A stretch of 64,000 nucleotides of DNA, from assembly GCA_002269645.1 (NCBI GenBank), contig NIVC01000205.1:7276-71275 (forward strand), written 5' to 3'. The position numbers and the translations under genes are program-made. The stretch comes from Macrostomum lignano. Lineage: Eukaryota. The notes beneath the pieces are model-generated. The model was not told where the DNA came from and searched no databases. It saw only the letters and a program-made list of their open reading frames with translations. This document shows positions 27,508 through 61,611 of this stretch, one piece after another; positions within the stretch are counted from its first letter, which is position 1; each line of letters opens with the position of its first letter.

Positions 27508-27784
27508 GGGGTGCTTTCACAAGGTCGAAATTTCACAACGTAGAAAACTCTAGCAAGAGACTTCAAGGTCGAAATTTCATAACATCGAAAACTCAAATAG
27601 CAGGCACTTTCACAAGGTCGAAACTTCATGAGCTCGAAATTTCAAAACGTCACGGTATTTGCACGGTTACCGTGAGTACTACTGAAGACCATGCAGTAGT
27701 TTTCTACGTTGTGAAATTTCGACCTTATGAAGTCTCTTGCTAGAGTTTTCGATGTTGTGAAATTTCGAGTTTGTGAAACCCCCC
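27508..27784. mobile_element. Foldback MITE with about 90-bp imperfect terminal inverted repeats and G-rich/C-rich ends
   Basis: The left arm (TTTCACAAGGTCGAAATTTCACAACGTAGAAAACT...) matches the reverse complement of the right arm; TTCTAGAG is directly repeated at 27500-27507 and 27785-27792. Confidence 0.85.
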
Positions 27785-29012: not shown

Positions 29013-32000
29013 CAAACATTTACACGCTTACATAGTTAGCTAGATCTTTGCATGGCATATGTATAACAGCTTTAGAGGGTTTCAGTTGATAGGATGCCAA
29101 AATTCCAGAGTTTTATGATCCCTGTATTTTGCAGTCCATACCATAGTTTTATAAAATCTAGCAAAAAGTGTTAAAATCCCTGACATTGGTAAATTAATTT
29201 GCGACATTTATTTAATTTGCAGAATTGACAACTGGTAGTAGACCCTTCAGCAGCATCTCATCTCCAAGCCTGGGGATCTCAGCAGGCGGAGTCTACTATC
29301 TCTAAAGATTTTTAATAACCAGATAGTTAGATTTGCAAAATCACTTTTCTGTCACTTTGTCATTCGATCGCTTTTCTTTTTTGTGAGTGAGCACTTATTT
29401 GTAATGCTAACAAAAAAACACTATTCATCTTAGTATTTTGCTTATCCAAGTAGTACGCTACAAATCTCAAGCTACTTTTTAGCACACAATTGGACTACTC
29501 TAGGCTGTAAAGAAAACTTTTTGTTATAATGTAGCGTACTTTAATAACTTTCTCGAAATTTCGTTAGATTTCTAAAGTCAAAAAGATTTATATTTCCAGA
29601 AACTTCTTTAAGTTAGCATCCTATCTATAACATACGCACATAAATAGCAAATAATTAATTATTACTTAACTGTTAATATTCTACTCGTATTTGCGTAACG
29701 TATACAATTAAGTGTTTAATCGCTTTGTTAAGATGCGCTCAATCTTTCTAGAAATTTCCGGAAGACAGTTACAAATCTATAAATATACGGCGACGGCAGT
29801 GACACGAATCACCTTCCCCTTGTTTTCTCTTCGATCTGATTTCCGTTGATAAACTACCAAATGAACCACCGCCTTGCTCTTAGTCAATAACAAAATTAAA
29901 GAAAAATCTACAATAATACGCAAACACTTTAATTTGGGGAAATTTAAATTTTCCGCCGACTGATGAGCGCGGCCCGGAACAATTAAGTAGGCCCTACTCG
30001 CCCTAGTAGGTCGGAAAAGAAGAAAACCTCTTCTAATCGAATGCGCCAACATTATATCAATGAAACTGAGTTCCTTTAAGGTGAGAAAATACACTGTAGT
30101 ACACACATCAATAAGTAAAAAATCAATGTCTGAAAATGCCTATGAACAGACGCAAGGTTTCAAGTGCCGCTTACATTATGCTTAACCTTATCGCATTACT
30201 AACATCACATCACATGCAGCCATGCATGAGTTTTTTTAATGTTGATTTTTAATGCCTTATCTGTAATATAATTATAAAATATTGTAGCCTAGGCCTAGGC
30301 CTTAGCTTAAAACAATAACAGAATGTAAAAAGCTTTAGGCCTCCCGAGTTTATGTAATGCCCTATATTGTGTGGATCAAACTGACAAACTTCCAAAATGT
30401 CTAGGACTTTTTGAACTTTAGCAGCGTTTAGCCTAGGCTTAACTGGCTTTAGGACTAGTACTAGGTACATGGGGCCCTTATTTTGTGAAATATTTAATAG
30501 TTTGATAGTTTTAATTATTAATTTGATAGATAGGCCCTAGTTAAAGCCGTGGCTAGGTCCCTAGCCTTAGTATCTATAAAATGATAGGCAGTTGTTATTG
30601 TAGCGAGACATTTATTTTTACAGTCAACACTTAAAATGCCATTGAAGTGACAAACTTGCTATGTAAATACTAAGATGGTTAAATAAAAAAATAAAAAAAC
30701 TTAGTATTAATAAATACGATGGTAACTTCTAGTGGTTCTTGTCATGGTAACTTACTCTAGGTAATTGTCAACAAAGTTGGCTTTGTTAAAAATATATACT
30801 TTCTTATAATTTTTGAATGAAGCTTTATACTGTTACGCATTTTTGCCCTTTGTAATAAATGCATCTTGAAGGCATTTTTGTGCATTTGTGTAACGTCGTC
30901 GCTTCTGTATTGAAAATGTTCAATTTCGTATTTATGGTTTTTGCAATTAATATTTAAAACTATATCTATTTCGGTCTAATGTTTGTAACTATTTTTTAGT
31001 TACTTTCCCCATTTGGTTTAATTTTGTTTTTCTATTTTCAATTAGTGCGGTTATTCAAATTTTGCTTCTTGATAGTTTTCAAGTACTCATTTTTGTATTA
31101 ATATTTATACTCGTTGTTAGTTGTTAGTCGTCACTTTTCGTCCAAAAATACCGTAAAAATTCTGGCGCGCTTTCAAATACTTTATCTTTTACAATAACTC
31201 TAACTCTTACTACTACTAACTCGCGGCAAATCGTCTTTATAAACTTCTATTTCGAAAACTTTTCCAAATACATAGCTCTATAATATATTGGCCAAACAGG
31301 CTAATTGCCTGAGCCAAATTCTCTTACTACTACTACTTTGTGTATGGTCCTGCGCTCTGTGTGTTGGTCTTAGTTCCCGTAGGCTTGGTGGCATTAGCAT
31401 TATATTATCGTCTCAGATTACCCTTTGGTAAATAGTTGGCATTGCCATACTGCTTCTGACCTACTCACCATTATTCAGACTAGCAATTGAGTTGTTAAAT
31501 TAATAATACGTATATTGGCCTACGACAAGATCAACACTCACTCAGACTCAGCACGCGCACGCGCATCAGTCCCATGTTCTCGAACTAAATAAACTCGTCA
31601 CATTTGGAATAATAAATCAAGTAAAGGAACTTGTTACGTACATGCAAAGTGTATTCACTGAGTAGAGTATCATACATATATATATATATGTATGTATAGT
31701 GAGAAGTATCATATATATATATATATACAATACTATTTTATTTTGAAGTTGGTATTTTGCAAGTGATGCATTAAACAACTATAACAAAGTTAGGAACTCT
31801 ACTATGCTATAAGTTATTTGTTTGTTGCTGATATGACTTGATACTAAAACATCTGTTGCAAAAGTGTCTTGTTACAGAAGTGTCCAGAAACCTATGTCAG
31901 TTACTACATCTACTATTTAGCACTGGTAGACAAATAATCCACTGGCCATTTGCCCAGGGCAGATGAATAGTCTGGCAGACAAATATTCCTAGATCCTAGA

Positions 32001-33585
32001 TCTATTATAAAAAGGGGCCTAAAATATGCCCTAGGCCTAATCATGATGGAAAATAAAAAGGACAAAACAAAAACTTATTTCAAGGCATTTGCCTTCTATT
32101 CTCAGTAGTACAATCTGTTTTAATGAACTTAATAAAGTTTAGACTTAGAGATATTTTTTATCATTTTCCTAGTCATAGGCCTAGTCTTCACAGTTGTCAA
32201 AATGGTAAAGATTCAAGTCAATGGTCATCTCTATAAGCTTTTCTATAGGTATAGCCCATTTGGTAAAAGAATTTTCAGCAAAAGATGCTTTGGAAAAAGT
32301 GAATTTTTAGTTTATATAGATTGAACATTTTGGTGAAAGAAGGTGACCAGTTCAGCAAAAATATAGACTACTTACTTATTATAATTACAAGTATACCACT
32401 AGTGATTGTAGACCTAGCTTTTAATAAATTATTCATTGATTACTATATACATATATTTAGTTTGTAAATTTAAAGTCTTAGAACTTAGCTAGCTAGGCCC
32501 TAATAGTTATGTTATATATGCAAAGTGCAATCAATAGATCAGGCTAAGGATGATAGTTTGGTTTTTTGGTTTTATTTCCTAAATTATACTTTGAAATCTT
32601 ACTAGGCCTATAATAGGATGACACCTAATAAAACAACATTTTATTAATCTAATAATAATATTGATACAATAAAAACATATAAAGATAAAATAGTCTTTAA
32701 AATTTGTCTTTTTTCATTGTCAAAGTCGGTTGAAACCTCTTCTATAGTGGCCTTTAGTTTTTAGGTATAAATTTTAGGTGTCTACTTTCTATCTTATACA
32801 GAGAAACAACAATAGGCTAGAAATTTTCTATATAGATCCAAGTAATAATACAATAAATTTCAAGGATAAAAGATGAGTATAGGCCTAATGATTTTATCCC
32901 AAGTCATTTTGAATTTGAGTAAACAAGTTTTCATTTGACTTTAATCTATAAAAATTAGAATAATTGAAAATGATTAAAAATAAGCAAATTAGGGTTTACT
33001 TGGTATTGAGCATAGTATTAAGTTTGTTTGCCAATTGATTTAGTCACAAGCATGATTAGCCAGCTATCATTTGTTGCATCTGTCAGGTGCTCTATAGTGC
33101 AAAACTTTGCTAGGCAGTTACCAATGCTATAATATTAACTGCTAGTCTGCAAGGTTGATAGCAGCTATAACCTACAAGTGAGTGACATTTAGGCTGTCTA
33201 TTAGGTCTTAAAGAATTTATTTAATGACACCTCTAATGCTTTCTATTAGCACTCTAAAAACAAGTTGTATATGTCCTAATGACCTTGTTTGAAAATTGAA
33301 GACTACCTTGTTAAATCTGAAATGAAGCAACTCTATCTTGCAACAACTGCAAATCTAGCTCCAAGCTACTAAGCAGGTCTCAAATCTTAGACTTTTTAAT
33401 TAATTTCCTTGTAATATTATTGCTTTGCTATTACCCAATATACTTCTGCACCTATTCACAAAGCTTCTATAGTTTGCTGATTATATATTGCTGTTTGGAA
33501 ATAGTCTTATAACATTCAGCTTATTTTTTAGCCTTTATGGCTGCTTGATAAGTAATTTTCATTAGGAGTGCTAACTGGTAGCATC

Positions 33586-34655
33586 TAGGGAATACAAAAT
33601 CCCAAGTTTTGCCAATCCCAGGATTTAGGGATTGTGATATCCCAGGATTGAAGAGGTTTCTAATTTTTGTTAGTGCAATTTTGGCTTAAAAAGTCATCCA
33701 ATCTAGTTTTAAAGGGCTTTCAATGATAAAAGTACAACAGAATAAAAGATTTTGCAAACAAGAAACTGATAATGAGCTCTGAAATGGAGTGTAAATAGGC
33801 TGGCATAATAGAAGGTTTTTTACATGCAAGTATCAGCTCAAGAAAATCACACTTGATTGTGATATAACATGTGGAATGATAGCTTATAGAGCTATGGCAT
33901 AAGGTATTGATACCAGTTTAGAAAGGGATCAGACCTCACCCTCCCAAGGGCACCCACCCTAGATAAAGAATGGGTAGCTTGGGTTGTGGTCCAATAGCAA
34001 GGTCCCAAGTCTTGACTCCCATTGTTCTAATCCCAACTATAGCCAAGGAGGTTTTGAAGGTAGGGATTACTTAAAATAGTTTTGCTACCAACCCTATTCT
34101 GGGCATCTAAAGGGTGTCTTGACTGTGTTGAGAATGAGGTCTTTTGCATAGGGGGCTTCTGATCTGCACAAGGTCAAGACTTGAAACCCATTGACTTAGC
34201 TAGGTTTGGAATAGATAAAGAGTTCAAATGAACAATGAACAATGATCTGGCAAGCTATAGTACCATGATAGGAAACAATAAGGAATTGGCTTCTATTGCT
34301 TTAGGCTTTGTTCATAGGTTTTTGAATAATAATTAAATTTGTCTGCAATTAGCATATGCATATACTGTAGCTGCATGTACATTTATTATTATACCTGAGA
34401 TCTCCTTACAATCTGCCAATAGCTTCAGTTTTGTATCCATGTAGCCCTAACCTTCTCACTAGCTTGCATGTTTAAAAGATTAATAAATCAAAGCAAGACA
34501 AATAAGTGATGATTTTCACCTGACAAACAGCTTAGCTGCAGATACTACTACTAAGAATGAATGATTGAATTATTGCAAACTGGGATTAAGATCCCAATGG
34601 TCAATCCCAAGATTTTTTAATCCCAGACAATTGTGATCTAGGATTGTATTCCCTA
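33586..34655. mobile_element. Non-autonomous hAT-type DNA transposon, 1070 bp
   Basis: TIR TAGGGAATACAA / TTGTATTCCCTA; perfect 8-bp TSD GTAGCATC (33578-33585, 34656-34663); subterminal ATCCCA/GGGATT repeats. Confidence 0.9.
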
Positions 34656-35789
34656 GTAGCATCTTGCCAGTGCTATGCCTAATATTGAATATTATAGCTG
34701 ACTTCAAAGCTAACCAATTCATTAGCACCATTAGGCTTCTTCACATCAGATTAAATGTTAGATAATAAGTCCTTTGTCTTGATGCTAAGTATTTGCAAAC
34801 TATTGTAGGATCAAGTTCAAATGGCATTTAAATATCCTTTTTTGTGACTTGCTGTCTGCTTTTAGGTCTTGCTTATTATGTTGATGCCCTATCTTTTAAC
34901 TCCACCTTAAAATGATTGACCTTCCTCAATAGTATATACTTCTACTAGATGCTAAGGGCATTGCAATTAAGATTCATTGCCTGAAAGAGCCAAGTTGTAG
35001 CCTATACATCTTTTTTTCTTGTTTTTTGCCCTTTGCACAAAGTGCAATATACATTTTGGAGAAATTGTTATAGTGCTACATTAGGGTTTAGCATTGGGGT
35101 GGCTGCTATTGCTTTTGCCAACTAGGACCAGGTATAGATATTAATGACAATTGAGAAAGCTAAGTGTTGTATCAGTTATTTAGCTTTGCCTTGCATTTTG
35201 GCATTTTCAAATTCAATAAAAATACTAAGATTTGTGCCATATTTTGGGCTAGCTGAAATTTAAACTAAAGTGAATTTGTAGAGTCAATATAGCAAAGGAT
35301 AAAAGTTATAAAAGCAAAATCAAACAAAAAATTAAATATCTTTTTAATAAAAAACAAAGCAGATATAATATATGCATATATATCAGTCTAATAAATATCA
35401 TAAAGTTAAAAAACATGCAATTTTGAGATAGCCATCAAATTTTAGTAGCAAAAAGTCACAAAATAGGTGATTAAAATAGTTTCTAGCTTTTATTTTTTAA
35501 GTTTTTAATTTTGAAGTATAAAAAGTTTATTAAAATAATAAAACAAAAGTTTTTTTCCTGAAAAAATAAGCATAAGGCTATGCGGAGCTGGAGGTAAATA
35601 GCTCATAGCTCATTACTTAAGGAATAAAAAAGTGCAAGACTTATTTTATTGCAAAAAATAGTATATAACAGTGTATGGTATTAATAAAATATTTATGTTT
35701 TTTATTAGTACTTGCTGCATAAAACTAGCTTGAAGTCTGTTTGCAACAATGAATATCTACCATACTTTTTTCACCAATGCAATTCCCAG

Positions 35790-36925
35790 CATACTGGAGT
35801 TGAAGCCTGGCTGCCTTTCTGTCTAGCCTGCATAGCTCTGGCTCTGGGCAATTATGCCTATAGAAATGGCGCCCTGGACTTTATCACAGTTGCTAGGCAG
35901 TTTCGTAGACGCGATTGGCTATTGTATTTGTTGCAACGCCTAAGACGACAAGTTTCAACATGTTGGCCAATAAGAAGTTGTAAGCGTTCATCTACTGATA
36001 GTAGCAATCAAAGTAAAAGATGCGACTATCAATCAGAAAAAGCTACACAGCGATGGAAGCGTACAAGGCGATTGTCAGATGCAGCTATTAATTATTCGGT
36101 TATCAAATCGACAGCATCAGAGGCTACAAAGCTACAAAGCAATTTGCTAAGCAGTTTTGGCCTATCCAGCCTAGCGGAATTGTTACCCTGTCTGAAGCAA
36201 TTGAAACCAAGTCAGATTTCTCAGCTGGGCAAAGCTGCAGTGTCTAGTACAGTTGCTAAGGGCCAACAGTTGCTATGCCAGCCAACATACGGCGTGATAT
36301 TTATTGATTCTGGATTAATTGAGGTGCAGTTATTGAATGACAAGGATGTTATTGAATATATTCCACCTGGAGAGATTGTATTCAGTGCACTGATGCTGCT
36401 GAAATGGATTTATGCTTGTCAGGCACCAGGTGGTAGTCATAGTCGCTACCTGAGGCTGGCGGCTGTTACGGACACAAAGATACGCTGGCTGCCATTCGAT
36501 GCTTTGCTAGAGGCTCTAGCCTATGATCGCGAGTTTGATAATAACATATTGGTAATTCAATGTTGGCGCCAGTTTACTCGTGTAACAGCGCGCGGTCTGG
36601 CGCCACTGCTGCTGCCAGATGAGGCGCCGGTACCCTGGCTAAATAATGACAATGCTGTGAGCATTAATAATAATAATAATCATAATCATAAAACTGTCGC
36701 TGAGTTACTTGGAGTCGATGAAATCAACAGTTGTGCGTGTACTACTGTGAATTGTGGATCTGATCAAATTAAATTCGACAACAATTATGGACATGCATTA
36801 AGTACTACTGTTAGTAATGTTGACGTTGTTGTTCAAGCTGGTTCCGGCCAAGTTGGCGAATTGATTTGCGTGCTGCGAGGAAATTTATGGCAGCGCGTCA
36901 ATGGCCAGACCATGCTAGTTGGCAG
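35790..36925 (+). CDS. NTE/PNPLA6-7-like phospholipase, first identified coding exon: N-terminal hydrophobic segment and degenerate cNMP-binding regions
   Basis: Open frame over 1.1 kb; probable acceptor ttcccag at 35789; donor GTCAGT at 35790-frame phase 2 (36926). The start codon was not found. Confidence 0.7.
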
Positions 36926-37087
36926 GTCAGTATTGCTGGTTATCGATTGCGTATTTGATACGATAAAGTGGACTAGTGGAGGATTGTACAGCAACCCCTA
37001 ACTTCAATAATTTGTCAGTTTCCCGTTCACGCCTGTAAGGTTCTATCAGGTCTCCACGACATAATGTCTTTGAGACGTTTTAAGATC

Positions 37088-37320
37088 CCTTATATTGTCA
37101 GACCATGTCATATCCCCGATATTGTCAGACCGTGTCATATCCCCGATATTGTCAGACCAGGTCATATCCCCGATATTGTCAGACCATGTCATATCCACGA
37201 TATTGTCAGACCAGGTCATATCCCCGATATTGTCAGACCATGTCATATCCACGATATTGTCAGACCGTGTCATATCCACGATATTGTCAGACCATGTCAT
37301 ATCCCCGATATTCTCAGACT
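37088..37320. repeat. 27-bp intronic minisatellite GATATTGTCAGACCATGTCATATCCCC
   Basis: Read directly. Confidence 0.95.
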
Positions 37321-37355
37321 ACTTTCTGATCTTTATTCCTCCCAGATTCTGTTAG

Positions 37356-38168
37356 ACCCCCTGGCAGCCTTTCTCCTATACGTAGACTCAGAACCGGTCT
37401 TCAATTGAAGCAATCAATCCCCTTGCCACCAATCAGACCCGGAGACCTAGTGGGTCAGCTGGAATTTCTCAGCCGCCTGCCGTTGGCCTCAGGCGGTTCA
37501 ATCTACTGCCTGAGCAATTGTACTGCTCAGCTTGTTCGCATCAACCTGCCTCTGGCTGCCGCTACTGACAAGACCTTGATTCCCACTGTGGCCAATCACT
37601 TGGCTAAACAATTCCTACATTCCTTACTGTCGAGGCCGGATGTTCCGCTGACTGTCCTGCTAGAGCCTATCGCTCGCTATGTGTCACTTCGCATTGGCCA
37701 AGCGTTGCCCTTGGAATCTGTTGACAACTGCTATTTTTATGTGGTATCTGGCCGGCTGCAAGACTTTCTAAAATTTCCCTACGATGAAGCTTCTTCTGCC
37801 TCTGCATCGCCTGTTACTAAGGAATGCTATAGTGCTGGCTGTCTTGTTAATACCACTAAAGCCTCCTTGTACGCTTCATCATCATCGTTGGCCACCGTGG
37901 TAGCGGCAGTCCGGGACTCTGAGCTCATTAGACTGTCCCGTAGGCTGGTTGACTGTCTGTCTGTGCGCTGTCCGGCTTTTTCTCACCGACTGGTGTCAGC
38001 TGTAGCTCACAGACTGTTGGACTCGTATCGGGTTACGGCTGCTGATGATGCATCGACATTGCCTCTGTCAGATCGTCATTGCATTATTGCTCTGCTGCCT
38101 GGCCAAGCCTCTATTCCTGTGGATCTGTTTGCTCAACAACTGGCTGCCTGTCTGCCTGGAGTTGTCAG
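37356..38168 (+). CDS. NTE/PNPLA6-7-like exon: cNMP-like RPGDLVGQLEFL, VVAAVRDSELIRLS, CIIALLPG
   Basis: AVRDSEL motif as in NTE/SWS; phase-2 acceptor (gttag at 37355, alternative 37367) and phase-2 donor GT at 38169. Confidence 0.8.
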
Positions 38169-38224
38169 GTGTGTCATCTTTGCGGCATTTTGAATCAATG
38201 ATTCTCGCGCTGCAATCCACGCGA

Positions 38225-38645
38225 CTGATCCCCACTCACTGATCCTCACTCACTGATCCTCACTCACTGATCCCCATTCACTGATTCCTACTCACTGATC
38301 CCCACGCTGTAATCCCCACTCACTGATCCCCACGCTGTAATCCCCACTCACTGATCCCCACGCTGTAATCCCCACTTACGGATCCTCACGCTGTAATTCG
38401 CCACCCCCTGATCCCCACTCACTGATCCCCACTTACTAATCCCCACTCACTGATCCCCCCTCACTGATCCCCACTCACTGATCCACACTCACTGATCTAC
38501 ACTCACTGATCCCCACTCACTGATCCCCACTCACTGATCCCAATTTCTTTGATCCCCACTCACTAATCCCCACTAACGGATCCCCCCTCACTGATCACCA
38601 TTCACTGATCCCCACTCACTAATCCCCATTCACTGATCCCCACTC
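38225..38645. repeat. 14-bp intronic minisatellite CCCACTCACTGATC, with a short copy at about 39585-39645
   Basis: Read directly. Confidence 0.9.
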
Positions 38646-38766
38646 TTATCTCCCTAATTTTGTTTAGTGCGGCGTCTTAGTCCCCTATTTATCCATGTTT
38701 TGTACAATGCTTGACATTCTATTAAGATAAAAAAGCAGTATGCATTGCTCACAACTAACCTTTCAG

Positions 38767-39262
38767 GCGCCTCTCCTCAGACCGAGCCCGAAGTGTTTTC
38801 GGCGCCTCAGTAAAATGTTTGAACCAATCTTACCCATTGTCGTCAACGTCAGCAGACGAAATTCTCAAACATTGGATTGCAGCCGAAGAGGATTCTGTAG
38901 CTAGGCAGGATGAAGCTTCATCTAAGCGGCTGTTCCTATTGTTATCGCTAGACTATGCGCCAACCGCTTGGACCCGAGCTGCTTTACGCAGATCGGATAG
39001 AGTGCTGGTACTGCTAGAGCACAATGGGTGCTCAGTGCAGCCCAGCCTAGCCGAGATTTACTATTCCTCATTGAGCAGTTCGTGTGTATTATCTAGTAGG
39101 AGACGAATGGAACTAATACTGCTGCATTCGACTCGAAGGCGAGTGGTGCCAGCTGGTAGTACTCTTCCTTACCTGGTTGCTAGGCCCTGGCTTAGCGGGC
39201 ACCGGCATCTGCGACTGCCACTTAGGCTGCGACGGATCAGAGATCGGGGAAGAGTGGATGAG
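38767..39262 (+). CDS. NTE/PNPLA6-7-like exon: RLSSDRARSVFGAS...TAWTRAALRRSDRVLVL...WLSGHRHLR
   Basis: Matches the NTE linker (RLSSD..ARLG, PWTVRCLRQADCIL); tttcag acceptor in phase 2 and GTTAGG donor in phase 0. Confidence 0.85.
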
Positions 39263-39324
39263 GTTAGGGAGTTTTTGACAAGTCATTTATATGTATCCAG
39301 AAGTAAAATCCAGACTAAAAGATA

Positions 39325-39750
39325 AATCGTCCTAGACTAAATGAGAAATCCCCCCAGACCAAAAGAGAAATCGCCCCAGACTAAACCGAACGAGAACTCG
39401 CCCCAGACGAAATGAGTATTCGCTCCAGACTAAACAAGAAATCGCCTCAGACTAAACAAGAAATCACCTCCAGACTAAACGAGAAATCGCCCCAGACTAA
39501 ATCGAAGGAGAAATCGTCCGTGACTAAACGAGAAATCGCCTCATACCAAAAGAGAAATTGCCCCATACCAAAAAAGATTCACTGTTTCCCATTCACTGAT
39601 CCCCACTAACGGATCCCCCTCTGACTGATCCCCACTAGCGGGCGACTAAAAAAGAAATCGCCCTAGATTAAAAAAGAGAAATCGCTCTAGACTAAATGAG
39701 AAATCGCCCCAGACTAATCGAGAAATCGCCCCAGACCATGGGAAATCACC
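39325..39750. repeat. Degenerate ~20-21-bp intronic array GAGAAATCGCCCCAGACTAAA
   Basis: Read directly. Confidence 0.85.
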
Positions 39751-39789
39751 CCGGACTAAAGCAGATCGCACTCATTGCCAATCCTGCAG

Positions 39790-40746
39790 AAGTCGCCGCC
39801 CCCAGCTGCAGCCGACATGTGCCGTCTTGCCCGCCACCTGTCCAATGGCGCCATAGGCCTGGCCCTGGGCGGCGGGGGCGCCCGCGGTGCCGCCCACCCT
39901 GCAGTCCTCCGCCTGCTGGCCAACCGCGGAGTCCCCGTAGACGCCGTGGCCGGTACCAGCATTGGCGCCCTGGTTGGCGCGCTCTGGTCGATGGAAACCT
40001 GTCCACAATCTGTCCAACAAACTGTCAAGCAGATGTTTGCAGACAGCAGTAAGAAGTCTAGTCAGGCTTACGATGTCACCCTGCCATTGGTGTCGCTGTT
40101 TCGAGGCGGCCTGCTCAATAGCCTGCTTGCCCAGTGCTTCGATGTCAGGCGCGGTATTGAAGATCTTTGGTTGCCATGCTATTTTATAACTACAGAGTTG
40201 CGTAGTAGAAAGATTCGTGTTCTAAGCCGGGGCTCGCTTTGGAAAGCTGTTCGAGCCAGCATGTCCTATCCGGTGCTGCTGCCGCCTGTATGGTCAGACG
40301 ATGGTCAGGACTGTCTCGTTGACGGCTGCTTTGTCAACAATCTACCAGTAGATGTGTTGCGTCAGAAATCCGACGGCGTTATAAAAGTCATAGCCGTAGA
40401 CATATCGGATAGCAATCGGTTGGAACCTGGCAGGTTTCGAGTCTATGGCGACTGTTTGTCCGGATTCTCGGCTCTGTTGAGTCCGGCTGGTCGATATCCC
40501 AGGCTGATAGATGTGCAGATGCGATTGGCCAGTATAACCTCTAATATGCGAGTGACGGAGCAGCGGCTGCGGTCCATGCACTGGTGCTGGTATCTGACTC
40601 CTCCTGTGCAGGGCTTTGGTATAGCCAGTTTTAGCCAATTTCAGCCAGTCTACGATGCCGCTGTGGACTATCTGGAGGACAAATGGAGACGGGATTCCGC
40701 CGATGGCTCTTTGCCAACTTGGTTGATTGACGCCGCTAAACGATAG
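39790..40746 (+). CDS. NTE/PNPLA6-7-like last exon: patatin domain
   Basis: RLARHLSNGAIGLALGGGGARG, GTSIG nucleophile elbow, LWKAVRASMS, DGCFVNNLP; phase-0 acceptor cctgcag; stop at 40744-40746. Confidence 0.93.
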   Translation, partial: KSPPPAAADMCRLARHLSNGAIGLALGGGGARGAAHPAVLRLLANRGVPVDAVAGTSIGALVGALWSMETCPQSVQQTVKQMFADSSKKSSQAYDVTLPLVSLFRGGLLNSLLAQCFDVRRGIEDLWLPCYFITTELRSRKIRVLSRGSLWKAVRASMSYPVLLPPVWSDDGQDCLVDGCFVNNLPVDVLRQKSDGVIKVIAVDISDSNRLEPGRFRVYGDCLSGFSALLSPAGRYPRLIDVQMRLASITSNMRVTEQRLRSMHWCWYLTPPVQGFGIASFSQFQPVYDAAVDYLEDKWRRDSADGSLPTWLIDAAKR

Positions 40747-47781: not shown

Positions 47782-49792
47782 CTGTCAATGGAAAGTTTTT
47801 TTGTCTTTTGCTTCTTAAGACACTTCAGACTAATTATAAAGAAAAGTCGCGATTAAACTCACTGGTCAGAGTGCAGACTACCTGGTATTTTGATTTCTTT
47901 GCTTGGCATTCTTCGAATCTGAAAGCAATAAGCAAATATTGTACGCTATTCTTAAACTCTTATATTGTAGCAAATAAATAATACATAAGGAAGAAAGTGA
48001 GGAAGTTATCTGCCGTTTTAAATTTGACGGCTAGATTTATTTAGCCTAAAATTTATTCTTCGATTAAGCTTTGAACTTAGCAAATTATTCGTAGGCTTCG
48101 ATCACAGGAAATTAGGGAGCTGTCTGTTTTAATTACATACATGTAATAAAATTATGAATAAAAAGCGAGGGCGATTCTTACTGAATGTTTGCACTTCGGA
48201 AACGCTGCTTTAGTCCAGGAGTTCCAAAAATATACTTTTTGTGATCCTAAAATTTGTATTTATTACTTTATTCCATTTACGGAGGAAATTCAGGCAAGGT
48301 CACTGTGCTATGTTAAAAAAAGAATAAAATTGTTGAACTTGAACCTGAGCTCAAACAATAAATGCTTAATAAATAATATATCTAAACTATAAAATAAACT
48401 AAAATGCAAAAATTAGGTTGTATAAAACATATAAACTATTTTATAGGCAAAAGCTTTAGTGCGTATTTAAAATTTCGTTTAAGTGCTCTAATGTGAAAGT
48501 TTTTAAATTGTGAATTTTAATTTTAAAATTCGCGAAACCGCATCATCCGCGAAACCTTGTAAACTTTTTATTTTGAGTTTATTTGAGTTACGTCTAGCGT
48601 AGCATTAATTTTGACAATCAGCAGATAGAGATATAAATAGACGCATGTGAAATGTTCGAAAGTTTTTTGCATCGTTAGCAGTTAGTGTATAATGACTATA
48701 ATGTTAGCTAACGAACAAAGCCTAGAATTAAAATTTTCCATGTCAATTTATTTCTAATTCTAATTTGCTGTCGTTTAGGCCAGGGTAGGCCTATACAATA
48801 CTATAATAGGCAGATATTTTGTATCACATTTTTAAAGAAATCTAACTAAATACAGAGTATTACAGACTAGTATTAAAAGGTCAGACCAAGAGCAAGACAG
48901 TTAGACAGTAGTAAGGCAGGTAGGGTAGGGTGGCTCCCTATCCTACAATTTGTTGTTTATGATTTCAGTGACAAGTAAATAGGCCCCTATTTGTGAGAAA
49001 AAATTAAGGTCCAACAAACATGCATAAATGATGATGATTAATAATCATTTTATTCTAGATGAGACAAGTCATCTATAAAAATATTTCATCTTGACTATGA
49101 CAATAGCAAACCAAAGCTTTTAGCCTAGGAGGGTCTAGGCCCCTAGTCTATATATTATACTAAAATTAAGAATGAGAATCTTGCTTGTATGTATATACAC
49201 AATCAATTATCGGCTATCTTCCTCTTTCGTTCGTTTAATTCCAACCCCCACCCCCCACCACCCTTGAATAGAGGGCGAAATAATTCCGGAAATAATTAAA
49301 TGAATGAAAGAGGAAGATTACCCAATAATCTCCTGAAAGACAACCAAATTTACAATTTTGTTACCAAAAGATGTCATATATTATATATATTATAGTATAT
49401 ATTTTTATTAAGGAGCCTCTTCATATTGCTAGTTCCGAATTGGTTCAACGCTCTTCATATTGATGGTTTGAAAAACAGAATCAGTTTTGGAACATGGTTC
49501 TGGTTCTAGAATATGGTTCAAGAAGTCAAGAACCATTGTCATGCTTATACTTTAACAGTAAAATACATTGAAATTGTCAATTTTAATTATTGTTATATAA
49601 TTATTCCATTTTTTGTCATATCCAAGAAGAAACAAACAAAGTCAAAGAATGACAAAATTAAATTGTAAAGACTGTCAAACATAAAATGGGTTTGAAGCTC
49701 CTCATTTCACACTGGTTCTAGTTCTAAAACTCAAATTTATTCTGGTTCTAGAACTGATTGCTGTGAAGAGGCACAAGTTCTAGCTCATTGCT

Positions 49793-50086
49793 CATACATG
49801 CGCAACCTCCGAAATTCAGTCGGCCATGCGACTTAGTTTTAACAAAAATGCGACGTAGTTTTTGGCCAAAAATGCGACTTAGATGTAAAAAAACCCTAAA
49901 GCAAAATTAACGCAACTTTGGGTAAATGGCAGGAGTAACTATGACTGTTTTATTAAGGCAAAATGCCTCATCAGCTACTTAGTACTACTACGTTATTTTT
50001 CGGGTGGGCATTTTTGCGACTTCTTTGGTTGGCCGCCAAATCGGTCGGCCAGATCGGCCAACTCGGCCGACTGTTGCGCATGTATG
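49793..50086. mobile_element. hAT-type MITE, copy A (294 bp, CpG-rich)
   Basis: TIR CATACATGCGCAAC / GTTGCGCATGTATG; 8-bp TSD TCATTGCT (49785-49792, 50087-50094). Confidence 0.92.
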
Positions 50087-50374
50087 TCATTGCTAAACTC
50101 CTAAACCCTATTGGAATAAGTGTAGGCCCAGAAAACCTGTGGATGCGCAATATGGGATCTAAAATTGTAGCTCAAAAATGCAATGCAACATAGAACATAT
50201 TAACTTTTATATCAAATACAAGTAGAGTACTAACTAATTAGATGACAGGCATTTAGCCTTAATATAAAAATAGTTTGTTACTCTTGCCATTTACATAAAA
50301 CTATACCATCCCATACCACTTGCCTCGATTTCAGCCACAATGCAACATTGGAAAGTTCCAAAATTGCAATAGAT

Positions 50375-50652
50375 CATACATGCGCAACCCCCTGATTTAC
50401 ACTGGCCATGCAACTTACTTTTTGACCAAAAATGCAACTTACCTGGGAAAGAAACCCTAGAGCAACATTAACATAATTTTGGGTAAATGGCAGGCAGGAG
50501 TAACTATGACTGTCTCATAAGTACTAAATGCCTTATCATCTAATTAGTACTAACTACTATGTTTGTATTCTTTAGGATGGGCATTTTTGCAACTTACCCT
50601 TGGTCTACCACAATTTACAGTGGCCAGATTGGCCAGCAGTTGCACATGTATG
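50375..50652. mobile_element. hAT-type MITE, copy B of the same family (278 bp, CpG-decayed)
   Basis: TIR CATACATGCGCAAC / GTTGCACATGTATG; 8-bp TSD CAATAGAT (50367-50374, 50653-50660); internal sequence colinear with copy A. Confidence 0.92.
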
Positions 50653-52185
50653 CAATAGATAGTCAAATGCCTTTTTTGTTTATTCTAATAAGCTCCTAAA
50701 GGGATTAAAAATTTAAAAAACTATTTTGAATAAGCTTTTTAGTATATTTGCAATTTGCATCTAAGTTTAATTTAATTGCTGGCAATTAAAAACTTCAAAG
50801 TTAATTTTAATGGTTGTAGGCCTATTAGAGCCAACTGATAAAATAAATTATTGTGTCCCATTGCCAAGATAATTACTTAATTTAAATTTCCCAATTATAT
50901 ATACCCAATATATGACAGGATAAGCAAAAAAATTTAGATGTTAGTAGATAGCTTTATATATATTATATATATAAAATTATATATTGGCAGTAAAGATATA
51001 TATATATATATACATATATGGCCTAGTTATATATTGGCAACACAAATGTGTACATTTTATTAAATATAGTCTCATGATTACTTATTGCTTTGTAGAAGTG
51101 TTATAGTTTTTTAAAAAGTAAATTTATGCCAATAGATGCCTCTAAATGCAATATTCAAATAGAAATCCATTGTTGAACAAGATCTTAAAATAGCCATATG
51201 TTCAGGTAGGTGACTGTAACTTAAAAACTGCTTAATAAAATAGATAATTCCTTGCATTAAAATCATATTAAATTGGTACATAAAATAGTTGCTAAATGCC
51301 ACATGAGGTTCTTCTAATTCTTGAAGCTTTAAAGCTTTCAATATTTATAATAAGTTTTTCCTTAAAAAGTAAATTACAGTGTATACCTTATTAGAATCCA
51401 TTTTTCTATATTTGATAAAAAATAGCAATTGTTTAATGCTATAGCTTTTTATCTGAAGTATATACAAACTCATTGTTTAATTTATTTAAAAGCAGGGAAG
51501 TTTTTGTAGATGGTGGACATAGCAGCAGGTCTAAGCTTAGGCCATGATTTTAGTCAGGATTCCTGACTTTTTAGAACAAGCAAGCCCTATAGGGCCTAGA
51601 TATAACTGTCCTCATCTTATCTCCTTTGCTACACCTCTTTTATCTTGTCATGTTTTATTGTGCTATGCCATACCTTTGTATCTCATTGTACCTTTCCTAT
51701 TTTGCTATGATACATCATGCAAGACCATACTTTTCCCTACCTTGCCCTTGCCATAATCTGCCACTATTATACCTGATTGTGTCTTTCCCTGCCTCACCAT
51801 GCCATACCACACCATGCTATGCTGTCACCAGACTGATCTATGCTAGATGCCATCTGCCAAAATGTCTATGCTGTGGTGGCCAGACTGTCCGCAACTGGCA
51901 GCACCAGTGCAGCCGCACTGGAAACCCCCCCCCCCAACCTCTGTCTAGCTGAGGTGGGGTGGTTGCCACCACGCTAGCCTGCTTGCTAAGCCAGGGGGTT
52001 GGCATAGCCTATCACCCCACGCCACCTGTTCGCACCTCCCTAGGCCCCTCATGAATCTCGCGCAGTTTGTGTAAATATAAATATATTTTTGGCACCCTGA
52101 AATAAGCCCCAGAATGCTAAATGACACTGTGATTTTGATGCTTAAAAAACAATGGCGAACATTCATGCTGTGCTAAGAAGAAGCC

Positions 52186-57860: not shown

Positions 57861-59484
57861 ATGCAGTCGGATTTCGGCAAACGCCGTCAAATTCTGCGCA
57901 ACTACGTGGACAACTTCACCAGCAATACCACAGCGCACGGGTTCAGCCGAGCCAATGCCCAGCAGAACTGGGTGCGCCTTGTCTGGGTTGGCATTGTCAT
58001 GTCGGCCTTGTTAGGTGCAATTTTTCACGCTACTCAACAGGTGACAACCTACCTGCAGTATCCTGTGAGCAGTACGAATCGTATGGAGCCGAATTCGTTT
58101 GAGTTCCCAGACTTGACGATGTGCGATCCTCTTAATAAGCGCTTCTTTCACTTGACCAGCGCTGAACTGGCTGCGAAAAGAAATCGCTCAGAAGAGCTAG
58201 AAACAACCTACAGTCTGGTGTACAGCTACTTCAACACTGAGACCGATTGGCGCAAGGAGCGCAAAGCTATCGAGATGATTTACACAACCTGGGAGCACTT
58301 GCTGAATATCACGGATGTTAACATTCGGCCAATGGACATGGTGCTTTACTGCACGTTCGACGGTGTACCTTGTGGTCACGAGGACTTTCAGGTGTTCTAC
58401 CACCGAATGTACACCAACTGCTTCACGTTTCGCTCACCTGTACGCCGATTACGCAGCAGCGGCATGGACCGGGGCCTCTTTCTCCTGCTCTACGTGCCAT
58501 CTGCCGACGTCAGCCTCAAGATCGATAGTCTCGCCAGATTGGCCTCCGGCTTAGAAAACAATGGCATCCGATTTCAGATTCATCAGCGAGACACAATCCC
58601 GCATCCGCTGGAGTACGGCATCATGGCGCCCACGGGTACACTCACGGCTGTTGGTCTTGAACAGGTGACAACGTCGCTGGCTAACACACCCACACACCCG
58701 TGCATACCGCGGGAGCAGCTGGAGCTGTACGACAACCAGTTCGATTTTACGCGCACTTACGAGAGGCAGCTATTCGATTGCATCAAGGCCGAGTACCACC
58801 AGGAGGTGCGCAAACTCTGCCACTGCGTTTTGGAGAGTCATGTGATAGTAGATCACAGCTTCAACTGTTCATCTGTGACCTTCTGTCACGATCTGATTGG
58901 AATGCGCGATCCTAACAGGGTAAAGAAGATAAAGCAGCTGTACAAGCAAATCTCAGAAAAAGTAGGGAAGCGGGAAGATTTATCTGGCTACATCCGCTTT
59001 GGCCAGGAGATGCGACGCGCCGACCCAAGCCTAGATGAGGCGCTAAATCGCATGTTGTGTTCGGACAACGTCTCGGAGAATGTCGTCAAGCCGGAACTGT
59101 GCTACGATTCGTGCAACTATAATACGTACTCCTACAGCCTATCACAGTGCCCCTGGCCAGAGGACTCATTTAAAGTGCGCAATGCACAAATTCAAATGAT
59201 CAAAATCTCTGAAATGCTGGACGCCTATCGAGATCGACACAAGCATATTTTTCCGCGACCCGCTTTGACTAAGTCGATGCAGGAACACAACCTGAGCACG
59301 GCCAGTTGTCAAACGTTTGACACGCAGAATATGACGGTGCCGGATCAGGAAGAATGCAAACGCGTTCAGGGCTTTGTTCGACGATCCATCGTGCAACTGA
59401 GGGTCTACCCGGAAACTCTGACTGTCCGGCACACGATAGAGGAGCGGAGTTACGAGCTGGTGAACCTCTGCTCAGATTTTGGCG
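57861..59484 (+). CDS. DEG/ENaC (amiloride-sensitive, FaNaC/ASIC-related) channel, exon 1
   Basis: TTAHG motif, TM1 (LVWVGIVMSALLGAIF), FPDLTMCD, Cys-rich thumb, IVQLRVY...EERSYELVNLCSDFGG; GTAAGC donor in phase 1. Confidence 0.93.
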
Positions 59485-61611
59485 GTAAGCAGATGTGGAA
59501 TGTCTGTAAATTTGTATAAAAAACGATGCTATAAACATTAAGTGCTTCACAACTGTCACAAATAGCATGTCACGCATTCAGTTATGACTTCAGTTACTAT
59601 ACGAACAAGTAATCAACCAAAACCTTGAAACCCTAGTCAGCATCAAATCAGTAGCGGATCTTTCTGGATCAATCGCTATTTGTTTCAGTTCATTCCGGCA
59701 AGTTCTGAGAGTTCTTCGATATACTCTAACTGAATTTTGATTCTGACTAACTGAATCCGAGCTGCTATGGTTTAGCTAGGCTCACTAGCTGTAGAGTCAA
59801 AGTCGCCCACCCTGCACACAATACTTTCACGGGGCTGTTGTAGTGTCGTCAATAACTATTTGTACAGCACTAGCGAACCACTCCAGCACAAGAGGATTCT
59901 CTGTAAAACAGCAGGTGCCTGCAAAGTACTGACTAGTGTGTTTCAGCCCATTGAGAAGCTCTTTGACAGTACCGGTACTAGGGAATAGTAATCAATAGAG
60001 TCCTCTCCCGCTGCGTGCATTGCGCGAATGCAGATATGTTAATTACGCTCGTATTTATGGCAAGGCTCTCTCTACAAAGCGTGTATACGTATTTGTACAG
60101 TACTCGCTCGATTTGAGTCGGATAAGTTAGCTAGCTCATATTTTCACGTTTTAGCATTGCAGTCCTATTTACATTAAACTGCTGTTTCGTGCACATTAAT
60201 TAGATCATTGTTAATGATTACATCTGGCCAGAGAATATTATCGCTGTCTATAGCCATCCATGATCAATAATGTCATGCCCCGCTCTAATCCAAGCCCCGC
60301 TCATTTATCCAAATGATTTCTGCACCCGGTATCCATTGGCGAAAAATTCCATTAGTTTTCTTTCGAAGGCCAAATGTAAATAATAATAATTATTATTATT
60401 ATCATTATGACTTTTGTGCTTCGCTGGCAACAGTGTGCGACTTAAGCAGACTCTTTTTCAATTTTTAATGCCGGCTATTTGTCCTGGATAGCAAGGCCCA
60501 GTGGAGTGGGTGTCCATTACCTGGCCTTGTATGGGGCCTATCCCGGTCTGGCCGGGCTTCCCTAATCTAATTTGCCTCGGCGCCATACCGAATGCGGGGG
60601 CGCGGATGACTAATCTGCCTTTGTGTCCGCCTACCAGATCCAAATATTTTATTTGACTTTTCGCCATGCAGTCGCTAGCAAAGCTGGGATTTTGTGGATT
60701 AGGGACTCACTGAATTGTTAAATTTTCCCAGCTCATATTCTGCTACGAAGAGAGGAGATCGGCTTCTAGTTACAGAAGTGCTAAACTGAATTTTGCTACG
60801 AGTATTGAACTCAATCCTGCTCACTAGCAGGTAACGGCACCTGTACTATCTGAATGGATGACTCGATGATGCTTAACCATATCACATTCGATATATGGAG
60901 ATGCAATAAGTGTAGGTCAAGGGTGTTGAAATAAAAAAAAATGTCGATTACACGGCACTGTATATTTAGATCGCTTCGAATGCCGAGAAATAGCTGTCAT
61001 GCGGAAAGAAGCGATTTTATATTGATGACATTATCCAAAATGCTCTAAACCCTTGATTTTTATGTTGTAAGCATTTAAAACTGTAAGGTAAATATATAGA
61101 ATTTTAATAACAACTGTGAAGTTTTACCGTCCTATTGGTTTCATAGAAAATTACAAGACAATCTAGATGAAAAAGACAGTGACCAAGTGGTATTCCCGGG
61201 CGCGTCTCATGTATGCCAAGACTCCAAGCGCAAATTTTATCAATCACTGGTGAAAAAGCAGTGTGGTGCGAAACCGCTTGCCCTGGGTGTAAGCCGTGCT
61301 TTCATTTATTTGCCTTAAGACAATAAAACAAGTATTTCCCTTCAGTTAGAGGGCAGAGACATCCAGTGAAATTGTGACATAGGCTGGATATGTATCATGA
61401 ACGCTGTGCAATTGATCTGAAGCAGCTCGTATTTGTCCATCATACAAGTGACGCCGACATCCCTCGGCGTAATCCGTCATGTAAAAAGACCCAATTCGCC
61501 AGCAACGTCCATCCACTGGATTAGTTAGTAGAAGTCAGTTCTTAACGGTACTTCTTGCATTCAAAGCATAATCAAAATACAATCTTCAATTTTCATCACA
61601 AATTTTTTCAG

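What the first reader, a model, noticed from the sequence alone, without database searches (positions are those of the whole stretch)
49785..50660. Twin MITEs record targeted CpG decay: 18 CpG versus 1
Seen: two independent insertions of one family (different 8-bp TSDs) lie 288 bp apart. Copy A has 18 CG and copy B has 1. Aligned changes include gCGact to gCAact (3 times), aCGtt to aTGtt, atCGg to atTGg, gCGcat to gCAcat and one apparent CG to TA, plus a few CA to TA changes. Established: this spectrum is the hallmark of 5mC deamination. Inference: this domain is or was germline-methylated, copy A is a later arrival, and the CA to TA changes hint at non-CpG methylation. This is the clearest internal evidence for a localised methylation system in the window.
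Basis: partly seen in the sequence, partly recalled or inferred. Interest (0 to 1): 0.8.

Follow-up and report, generated by a model that had tools for sequence, protein, structure and literature searches.

The report
Two transposon copies, unequal CpG decay
Two neighbouring copies of a small DNA transposon differ 18 to 1 in CpG count through CpG-specific mutations, the ordinary footprint of DNA methylation, but the copies come from already diverged sublineages, so this pair cannot show that the decay happened at this spot.

Summary
Copy A (49793-50086) has 18 CpG and copy B (50375-50652) has 1. Both have the 14-bp terminal repeat CATACATGCGCAAC and perfect but different 8-bp target duplications, and they lie 288 bp apart.

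Of A's 18 CpGs, 10-12 align to TG or CA in B. B has no CpG that A lacks. Outside CpGs, transitions are not in excess (16 transitions, 19 transversions).

- A and B are about 80% identical, yet their termini and duplications are intact, so most divergence predates insertion (p about 0.001).
- B carries its own uniform motif, TGCAACTTAC three times, against TGCGACTTAG in A. A CpG-poor subfamily is therefore not excluded.
- Cytosines before A show no excess of change (2 of 35), so nothing points to non-CpG methylation.
- Both copies sit in one CpG-poor block (48.8-51.9 kb, with no CpG from 50384 to 51889). The contrast is therefore one of age or lineage, not place.

Two things are new. A third, fragmentary copy lies between them. 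All three share a core of about 65 nt derived from 28S rRNA, which had already lost CpGs before the copies diverged.

This is an ordinary phenomenon in an unidentified eukaryote.

The parts
49785..49792 (.). Left 8-bp target site duplication of copy A (TCATTGCT)
   Evidence: Identical to 50087-50094.
49793..50086 (+). Copy A of the miniature transposon (MITE): 294 bp, 18 CpG, perfect 14-bp terminal inverted repeats CATACATGCGCAAC. It carries the subterminal motifs TGCGAC(T/G)TAG three times, TGCGACTTC once, and xTCGGCC.
   Evidence: (I19). All 18 CpGs lie outside the 28S-like core.
49920..49983 (+). 28S rRNA-derived core of copy A (matches Rfam LSU_rRNA_eukarya at about 2246-2310); it has no CpG
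   Evidence: Rfam E = 0.021, below the gathering score; local alignment score 65 against a shuffle mean of 15.3, z = 23.
50087..50094 (.). Right 8-bp target site duplication of copy A (TCATTGCT)
50214..50305 (-). Copy C: an old, partial, minus-strand fragment of the same family. It keeps only the core, with no recognisable terminal repeats.
   Evidence: A 130-206 against 50294-50214, 78.6% identity. (score 82 against a shuffle maximum of 35); it shares the family's derived states ATGG and GCAR relative to 28S, and the non-rRNA tail TTGTATT with B.
50367..50374 (.). Left 8-bp target site duplication of copy B (CAATAGAT)
   Evidence: Identical to 50653-50660.
50375..50652 (+). Copy B of the MITE: 278 bp, with a single CpG at 50383 in the 5' terminal repeat. 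Its 3' terminal repeat carries CG to CA. Its subterminal motif is TGCAACTTAC, three times.
   Evidence: In B, TG o/e is 1.47 and CA o/e is 1.36.
50481..50548 (+). 28S rRNA-derived core of copy B
   Evidence: Rfam LSU_rRNA_eukarya 2255-2310, E = 0.059. (score 68, z = 25).
50653..50660 (.). Right 8-bp target site duplication of copy B (CAATAGAT)
48773..51889 (.). AT-rich, non-coding, CpG-poor block that holds all three copies. CpG o/e is 0.26 left of A and in the spacer, and 0.00 from 50384 to 51889.
   Evidence: The CpG-free run 50383-51890 has 37.5 CpGs expected.
49216..49318 (.). Small hairpin element inside the same block. Its 25-nt arms differ at exactly two positions, and both are CG in one arm against CA in the other.
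   Evidence: (I2).

Best explanation
The locus is a cluster of three insertions of one family of non-autonomous DNA transposon (MITE) that makes 8-bp target duplications. There are two complete copies and one old fragment. The family's internal core is a captured fragment of 28S rRNA, about 65 nt long.

The cluster lies in an AT-rich intergenic block that has lost nearly all its CpGs. The 18-to-1 contrast is real and comes from CpG-specific C to T and G to A transitions. The cause I think most likely is deamination of 5-methylcytosine in the germ line.

That decay has acted on the family for a long time. All three copies already share CpG losses in the 28S core, so some decay predates their divergence. 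A and B descend from source copies that had already diverged by about 15-20%.

Copy A is a recent product of a lineage whose terminal and subterminal motifs (TGCGAC, TCGGCC) still carry CpG, probably because transposition needs those motifs.

Copy B lost its CpGs partly in its source lineage and partly where it now sits; the split cannot be determined from this window.

Shown: the anatomy, the mutation spectrum, its one-way direction, the origin of the core, the pre-insertion divergence, and the CpG-void surroundings. Inferred: methylation as the cause, the youth of A, and any decay of B in place.
For: - Anatomy: TIRs and TSDs.
- Spectrum: 10-12 of 14 aligned A CpGs become TG or CA in B, and none go the other way. 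Non-CpG changes are 16 transitions and 19 transversions over 235 sites.
- Products: B has excess TG (o/e 1.47) and CA (o/e 1.36).
- Core origin: Rfam LSU matches; z = 23-25 against the LSU consensus, and only these three places in the window match it.
- Shared early decay: ACGG to ATGG and GCGG to GCAG in A, B and C.
- A has no CpG in its core and 18 in its terminal parts.
- Pre-insertion divergence: Jukes-Cantor distance 0.17-0.19, with no non-CpG change in 84 TSD and TIR sites of the two copies; P is about 0.0004-0.001.
- Uniform motif difference: TGCAACTTAC three times in B against TGCGAC(T/G)TAG in A.
- Setting: no CpG in 50384-51889, o/e 0.26 in the left flank and spacer, against 0.9-1.4 in other AT-rich non-coding parts of the window.
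- Independent CpG-only change in the same block: the two arm mismatches of the hairpin at 49216/49294.
- At least one likely decay in place: B's 3' TIR has CG to CA, while none of its 40 other TIR and TSD sites changed.
Against: - No methylation data and no methyltransferase gene are available. The organism is unidentified.
- Only two full copies exist here, and no further copies were found in the collections that could be scanned. The subfamily consensus sequences are therefore unknown.
- A CpG o/e of 0.00-0.01 is far below the roughly 0.2 equilibrium of heavily methylated vertebrate DNA. This needs either an unusually high CpG mutation rate or another process.
- Exons in the window are not CpG-depleted (o/e about 0.7-1.07), so any methylation would have to be confined to certain non-coding blocks.
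- CpG decay in the window's tandem arrays is uneven. It is strong in 14774-17304 (60 of 240) and absent in several others.
Confidence: 0.6

Rival explanations
1. Subfamily origin only. Copy B was already CpG-free when it inserted, because it belongs to a diverged subfamily whose source copies carry TGCAACTTAC and TGGCC motifs. Nothing about this site is recorded by B. Both copies landing in a CpG-void block reflects a preference for AT-rich targets or short-range hopping.
For: Most A/B divergence predates insertion (P about 0.001). B has one uniform 10-mer, TGCAACTTAC, at all three motif positions. This includes the same TTAG to TTAC difference at both 5' positions, a transversion that CpG decay cannot produce. 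In B every GCGAC is GCAAC and every TCGGCC is TGGCC. Fragment C also lacks the rRNA CpGs.
Against: B's CpG level matches its flanks exactly (o/e 0.09 against 0.00-0.26). On this reading that match would be coincidence. B's 3' TIR has lost its CpG although a mobile source should keep both TIRs intact. The uniform direction of the motif changes could also come from a preference for the TCG context (6 of 6, note 3).
Confidence: 0.3
2. Decay entirely in place. A and B entered with nearly the same CpG-rich sequence. B has sat in a methylated block long enough to lose 17 of 18 CpGs, and A arrived recently.
For: The right flank is CpG-void and the left flank and spacer are CpG-poor. The spectrum and its direction fit. 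B's 3' TIR shows CG to CA.
Against: It requires all of the roughly 17% non-CpG divergence and the 8 indels to be post-insertion, while 84 TSD and TIR sites stayed unchanged (P about 0.001). It does not explain the uniform TTAC variant. It also needs a CpG loss rate at least 40 times the non-CpG rate (2.9 against less than 0.075).
Confidence: 0.1
3. A repeat-triggered hypermutation of the kind known in fungi (repeat-induced point mutation, RIP, or a relative with CpG or TCG preference) mutated the older repeat copies and leaked into neighbouring unique DNA. Ordinary methylation decay was not the cause.
For: The CpG loss is unusually complete and has sharp edges (o/e 0.00-0.01). Three related copies lie within 900 bp. 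Wherever the two strands of a lost CpG differed in context, the TCG cytosine was the one changed (6 of 6, note 3).
Against: CpA-context cytosines are not affected (2 of 35). Copy A is untouched. The larger void at 31638-35582 has no repeat partner in the window. The hairpin at 49216 shows ACG, not TCG, changes. The window encodes a DEG/ENaC channel and an NTE-type gene, which suggests an animal rather than a fungus.
Confidence: 0.04

Closest known systems
CpG decay of ageing transposon copies in methylated genomes (for example old against young Alu subfamilies in primates; established knowledge)
   Same: Young copies are CpG-rich and old or diverged copies are CpG-poor. The changes are CG to TG/CA, run one way, and exceed other transitions. 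TG and CA accumulate as products.
   Different: The host is unidentified and its methylation is unknown. The surrounding depletion is far more complete (o/e 0.00-0.01) and is confined to sharp-edged blocks, while exons and other non-coding DNA have o/e near 1. In vertebrates depletion is genome-wide and stops near 0.2.
MITEs of DNA transposon superfamilies that make 8-bp target duplications (hAT, P; also Merlin at 8-9 bp)
   Same: The element is short (278-294 bp), non-coding, has 14-bp terminal inverted repeats and exact 8-bp duplications, carries repeated subterminal motifs, and occurs in a local cluster of the kind short-range hopping produces.
   Different: The terminus CATACATG... is not the usual hAT (C/T)A(G/A)NG start, and the duplications do not fit nTnnnnAn. 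No autonomous partner is in the window, so the superfamily is not assigned.
Transposable elements carrying rDNA-derived modules: SINE28 (28S, mammals) and Pokey/mPok (rDNA spacer repeats, Daphnia); reviewed in PMC10946416, Table 2
   Same: A piece of ribosomal DNA is built into a non-autonomous mobile element.
   Different: Here the carrier is a cut-and-paste MITE, not a SINE. The piece is the segment of about 65 nt spanning the R2 and Pokey insertion region of 28S. That review lists no DNA transposon with a 28S fragment.
Ac/Ds subterminal transposase-binding motifs that contain CpG (established knowledge, recalled from memory, not tested here)
   Same: Repeated short subterminal motifs containing CpG (TGCGAC, TCGGCC) could be kept by selection for transposition. 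That would explain why A's CpGs survive only there.
   Different: No transposase is known for this family, and binding and methylation sensitivity are untested.

Membership tests
MITE (non-autonomous class II element) | Terminal inverted repeats | tested here: met
   CATACATGCGCAAC is 14/14 in A and 13/14 in B. There are four occurrences in the window against 0.5 expected.
MITE (non-autonomous class II element) | Target site duplication of fixed length that differs between insertions | tested here: met
   8/8 for TCATTGCT (A) and 8/8 for CAATAGAT (B).
MITE (non-autonomous class II element) | Small size and no coding capacity | tested here: met
   The copies are 294 and 278 bp, and no ORF of 50 aa or more lies within them.
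MITE (non-autonomous class II element) | Many copies in the genome and a related autonomous transposon | not testable with these tools
   Only this 64-kb window is available. It holds two full copies and one fragment. Scans of the metagenome, GTDB and IMG/VR collections found no family members.
hAT superfamily | 8-bp duplication fitting nTnnnnAn and termini starting (C/T)A(G/A)NG (recalled from memory) | tested here: inconclusive
   The 8-bp length fits. The terminus CATAC and the duplications TCATTGCT and CAATAGAT fit the consensus only in part. P and Merlin elements also make 8-bp duplications.
Methylation-driven CpG decay | Transitions at CpG exceed transitions at other C/G sites | tested here: met
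   10-12 of 28 CpG sites against 7-9 of 87 other C/G sites; odds ratio 4.8-8.6, p = 0.003 to 8e-5.
Methylation-driven CpG decay | One-way loss with TG/CA products | tested here: met
   12 losses in B against 0 in A (p = 5e-4). In B, TG o/e is 1.47 and CA o/e is 1.36. The 28S consensus used as outgroup shows CG to be ancestral in the core.
Methylation-driven CpG decay | 5mC present in germ-line DNA and a maintenance methyltransferase in the genome | not testable with these tools
   There are no methylation data, no methyltransferase in the window, and the organism is not identified.
Non-CpG (CpA) methylation decay | Excess C to T change at CpA relative to CpT and CpC | tested here: not met
   CpA 2 of 35 against CpT plus CpC 7 of 52; Fisher p = 0.30, in the opposite direction.
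RIP-type repeat-induced mutation | C to T changes across repeated copies with a CpA (or TCG) preference, affecting all sufficiently similar copies | tested here: not met
   CpA is not elevated and copy A is unaffected. The TCG preference is 6 of 6 in A to B but 0 of 2 in the hairpin.
rDNA-derived module in a mobile element | Significant similarity of an internal segment to rRNA | tested here: met
   Rfam LSU_rRNA_eukarya positions about 2211-2312, E = 0.02-0.06, below the gathering score. Sequence alignment to the model consensus gives z = 23-25 for A and B and 13.8 for C.

The most novel reading that the evidence does not exclude
This unidentified and poorly sampled eukaryote confines a very strong CpG-destroying process, either dense germ-line methylation or a CpG-specific mutator, to sharply bounded non-coding blocks (31638-35582 and about 48.8-51.9 kb). 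It drives them to zero CpG while exons and neighbouring non-coding DNA stay at o/e near 1. The MITE family, whose CpGs lie in its transposition motifs, would then work as a dated probe of that process.
Probability: 0.2. Interest if true: 0.5.

Novelty: new member of a known kind. Interest (0 to 1): 0.3.

Why it matters
The pair itself is a textbook case: transposon copies of different age or lineage differ in CpG because methylated CpGs mutate fast. Its use is practical. It flags that this genome probably has, or once had, CpG methylation acting on some non-coding blocks, and it provides a repeat family that could date that process once all copies are collected.

Two side results may interest transposon specialists. 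One is a cut-and-paste MITE whose core is a 28S rRNA fragment. The other is a CpG landscape that switches between o/e near 1 and o/e of 0.00 within a few bases.

Tried and rejected
1. More family copies. A 20-mer from the core found six metagenome contigs, but they share only 20-29 nt of rRNA-like sequence. Scans of GTDB genomes and IMG/VR with the core and with two subterminal motifs gave nothing or chance hits, and BLAST of A and B against all fetched loci found nothing more.

2. Identifying the organism.
- The DEG/ENaC ORF has one relative (76%, metagenomic) and nothing else even at E = 1e-3.
- Neither that protein nor its relative is on record in the contig index.
- The patatin exon is only 35-47% identical to animal and bacterial NTE proteins.
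- No rRNA, tRNA or other Rfam family reaches threshold in the window.

3. Tandem arrays as an independent test of CpG hypermutability. The pooled CpG transition rate is 4.5 times that of other C/G sites, but two arrays drive it. Unit variants are not independent, so I did not rely on it.

4. Pfam on six-frame translations of the void blocks. The tool refuses sequences with stops.

5. A TCG-context rule for which strand mutates. It holds 6 of 6 in A to B but is contradicted by the hairpin, so I dropped it.

6. Strand asymmetry of decay products in the right flank as a test of decay in place (TG excess 19.9 against CA excess 1.6). My rough estimate puts the difference within sampling noise, so I rejected it.

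7. Literature. The TIR sequence appears in no paper. The coral MITEs of PMC2872659 are unrelated elements with TTAA duplications.
Full report
**What is there**

The region holds two complete copies of one short element.
- Copy A is 49793-50086 (294 bp). Copy B is 50375-50652 (278 bp).
- Each begins with CATACATGCGCAAC and ends with its reverse complement. A is perfect at both ends. B has one change in its 3' terminal inverted repeat (TIR).
- Each is flanked by an exact 8-bp target site duplication (TSD): TCATTGCT for A and CAATAGAT for B.
- The terminal 14-mer occurs four times in the window at up to 2 mismatches, against 0.5 expected.
- A has 18 CpG (observed/expected, o/e, 1.27) and B has 1 (o/e 0.09). 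They lie 288 bp apart.

These are independent insertions of a cut-and-paste, non-coding transposon (MITE) that makes 8-bp duplications. That length fits the hAT or P superfamilies, but the terminus and the duplications do not allow a firm assignment.

First, the 288-bp spacer contains a third, minus-strand fragment of the family at about 50214-50305. It aligns with A at 78.6% identity, with score 82 against a shuffle maximum of 35.

Second, the conserved core of all three copies derives from 28S rRNA.
- Rfam's eukaryotic LSU model matches A and B at model positions about 2211-2312 (E = 0.02-0.06, below the gathering score).
- Plain alignment to the model consensus gives z = 23-25 for A and B and 13.8 for the fragment. 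No other place in the window matches.
- The segment is GGGTAAACGGCGGGAGTAACTATGACTCTCTTAAGGTAGCCAAATGCCTCGTCATCTAATTAGT. From my own knowledge, this is the region of 28S targeted by R2 and Pokey.
- A 2024 review lists SINE28 as the only 28S-derived mobile element and lists no DNA transposon with such a piece (PMC10946416).

**The mutation spectrum**

Of A's 18 CpGs:
- 1 is kept in B (the 5' TIR);
- 10-12 align to TG or CA, depending on the alignment;
- 1-4 are transversions or ambiguous;
- 4 lie in indels.

B has no CpG that A lacks, so the direction is 12:0 (p = 5e-4). Outside CpGs there are 16 transitions and 19 transversions over 235 sites. CpG sites therefore change by transition 5-9 times more often than other C/G sites (p = 0.003 to 8e-5). 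B shows the expected surplus of TG (o/e 1.47) and CA (o/e 1.36).

The 28S consensus serves as an outgroup for the core. All three copies share ACGG to ATGG and GCGG to GCAG. At CCTCGTC, A has CCTCATC, B has CCTTATC and the fragment has CCT-GTC. CpG loss was thus already under way before the three copies diverged, or before the rRNA piece was captured.

The proposed hint of non-CpG methylation does not hold. Cytosines before A changed at 2 of 35 sites, fewer than those before T or C (7 of 52). One of the two lies at a former CpG of the 28S core.

**Where did B lose its CpGs?**

Several points favour a subfamily contribution.
- A and B are only 80-83% identical, with 8 gap runs, yet their duplications and termini are intact.
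- If all non-CpG divergence (Jukes-Cantor 0.17-0.19) had arisen after insertion, the chance of no change in the 84 duplication and terminus sites would be 0.0004-0.001. A and B therefore descend from source copies that had already diverged.
- B carries the identical 10-mer TGCAACTTAC at all three motif positions. A has TGCGACTTAG, TGCGACGTAG, TGCGACTTAG and TGCGACTTCT.
- At both 5' motif positions B has TTAC where A has TAG-type endings. CpG decay cannot produce that transversion, so it looks like a subfamily character.

Other points favour decay in place.
- B's CpG level equals that of its surroundings.
- B's 3' terminus has lost its CpG while none of its 40 other terminus and duplication sites changed.
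- The post-insertion non-CpG divergence of B is below 0.075 (95% bound). Decay wholly in place would therefore need CpGs to be lost at least 40 times faster than other sites change.

I conclude that both contributions are likely and their split is unknown.

**Copy A**

All 18 of A's CpGs lie in the termini and the subterminal motif regions. Its 28S core has none, although the rRNA consensus has four to six there.

This fits a lineage in which unconstrained CpGs decayed while CpGs inside motifs needed for transposition were kept. A would then be a recent transposition product. This supports 'A is young' as an inference, but protection from methylation is not excluded.

**The setting**

The window's CpG map is sharply two-state.
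- Most of it, including exons and several AT-rich non-coding stretches, has o/e of 0.8-1.4.
- 31638-35582 has 1 CpG where 99 are expected. That block ends at the 5' end of an NTE-type gene.
- 50384-51889 has none where 37.5 are expected.
- The left flank of A (48773-49784) and the spacer have o/e 0.26.

Within the block 48.8-51.9 kb the CpG-bearing patches are discrete elements. One is copy A. The other is a small hairpin at 49216-49318, whose two arm mismatches are both CG against CA.

Both MITE copies lie in the same depleted block. Their contrast is therefore about time or lineage, not place. The evidence for localised decay is the map, not the pair.

The completeness of the depletion is notable. 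It is far below the roughly 0.2 seen in vertebrate DNA (my own knowledge) and is not explained by anything I could test.

**Cause**

CpG-specific, one-way transitions are the known signature of 5-methylcytosine deamination (established knowledge).

General AT pressure is excluded, because changes outside CpGs are balanced.

A repeat-induced mutator of the fungal type is unlikely. CpA sites are unaffected and copy A is untouched. The larger void has no repeat partner in the window. The gene content (a DEG/ENaC channel, an NTE-type gene, TPR repeats and a Ty3 integrase) suggests an animal.

The organism could not be identified. Its proteins have almost no close relatives in the databases. Whether it has methyltransferases is therefore unknown.

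**Verdict**

The core inference, methylation-type CpG decay, is supported as the best explanation. The claims of decay at this site, of A's later arrival and of localisation are plausible but unproven. The claim of non-CpG methylation is not supported.

The phenomenon is a known kind. The 28S-derived core and the zero-CpG blocks are the parts worth a further look once the whole genome can be searched.

Noticed in passing
window 31638-35582: A non-coding, AT-rich block of 3.9 kb has a single CpG where 99 are expected. Its edges are sharp, and it ends at the 5' end of the NTE-type gene. Neighbouring AT-rich non-coding DNA has CpG o/e of 0.9-1.2.
   Followed up: partly
window 49920-49983, 50481-50548 and 50233-50294 (minus strand): The core of the MITE family is a fragment of about 65 nt of 28S rRNA, from the region targeted by R2 and Pokey. 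A 2024 review lists no DNA transposon with a 28S piece.
   Followed up: yes
window 49216-49318: A small hairpin element has 25-nt arms whose only two mismatches are CG against CA. It forms a CpG-bearing patch inside the depleted block.
   Followed up: partly
window 49498-49511, 49716-49729, 49740-49753: The motif TTCTGGTTCTAGAA (nTTCnnGAAn, resembling a heat-shock element) is repeated 45-295 bp left of copy A.
   Followed up: no
window 35712-40746: An NTE/PNPLA6-like gene on the + strand has very large exons. Every gap between exons is filled by a minisatellite (27-mer, 14-mer and 22-mer arrays). Arrays with 12-47 bp units make up roughly a quarter of the window.
   Followed up: no
window 57861-59519: A single-ORF DEG/ENaC (ASC) channel gene of 552 aa has only one detectable relative in a database of 5.8 billion proteins: 76% identity, of metagenomic origin. 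The relative is 88 aa longer, so the window's ORF may be cut short at its C-terminus.
   Followed up: partly
window 27509-27784: Another MITE-like hairpin (57-nt arms, 89% complementary, 162-nt loop) lies in CpG-normal DNA. Only one of its six arm mismatches is a CpG transition.
   Followed up: no
window 14774-17304: A 21-bp minisatellite of 120 units has transitions at 60 of the 240 sites that are CpG in its consensus, against 5 of 960 at other C/G sites. Several other arrays with CpG in the unit show none.
   Followed up: partly
L001 about 1330-1720 and L004 about 750-1160; L002, L003 and L006 around the matches: Two metagenome contigs carry, downstream of a eukaryotic LSU 3' end, spacer subrepeats that are permuted copies of the same 28S segment. 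Three others carry a 28S fragment that stops at GTAACTATGACTG. This 28S stretch seems prone to being copied elsewhere.
   Followed up: no
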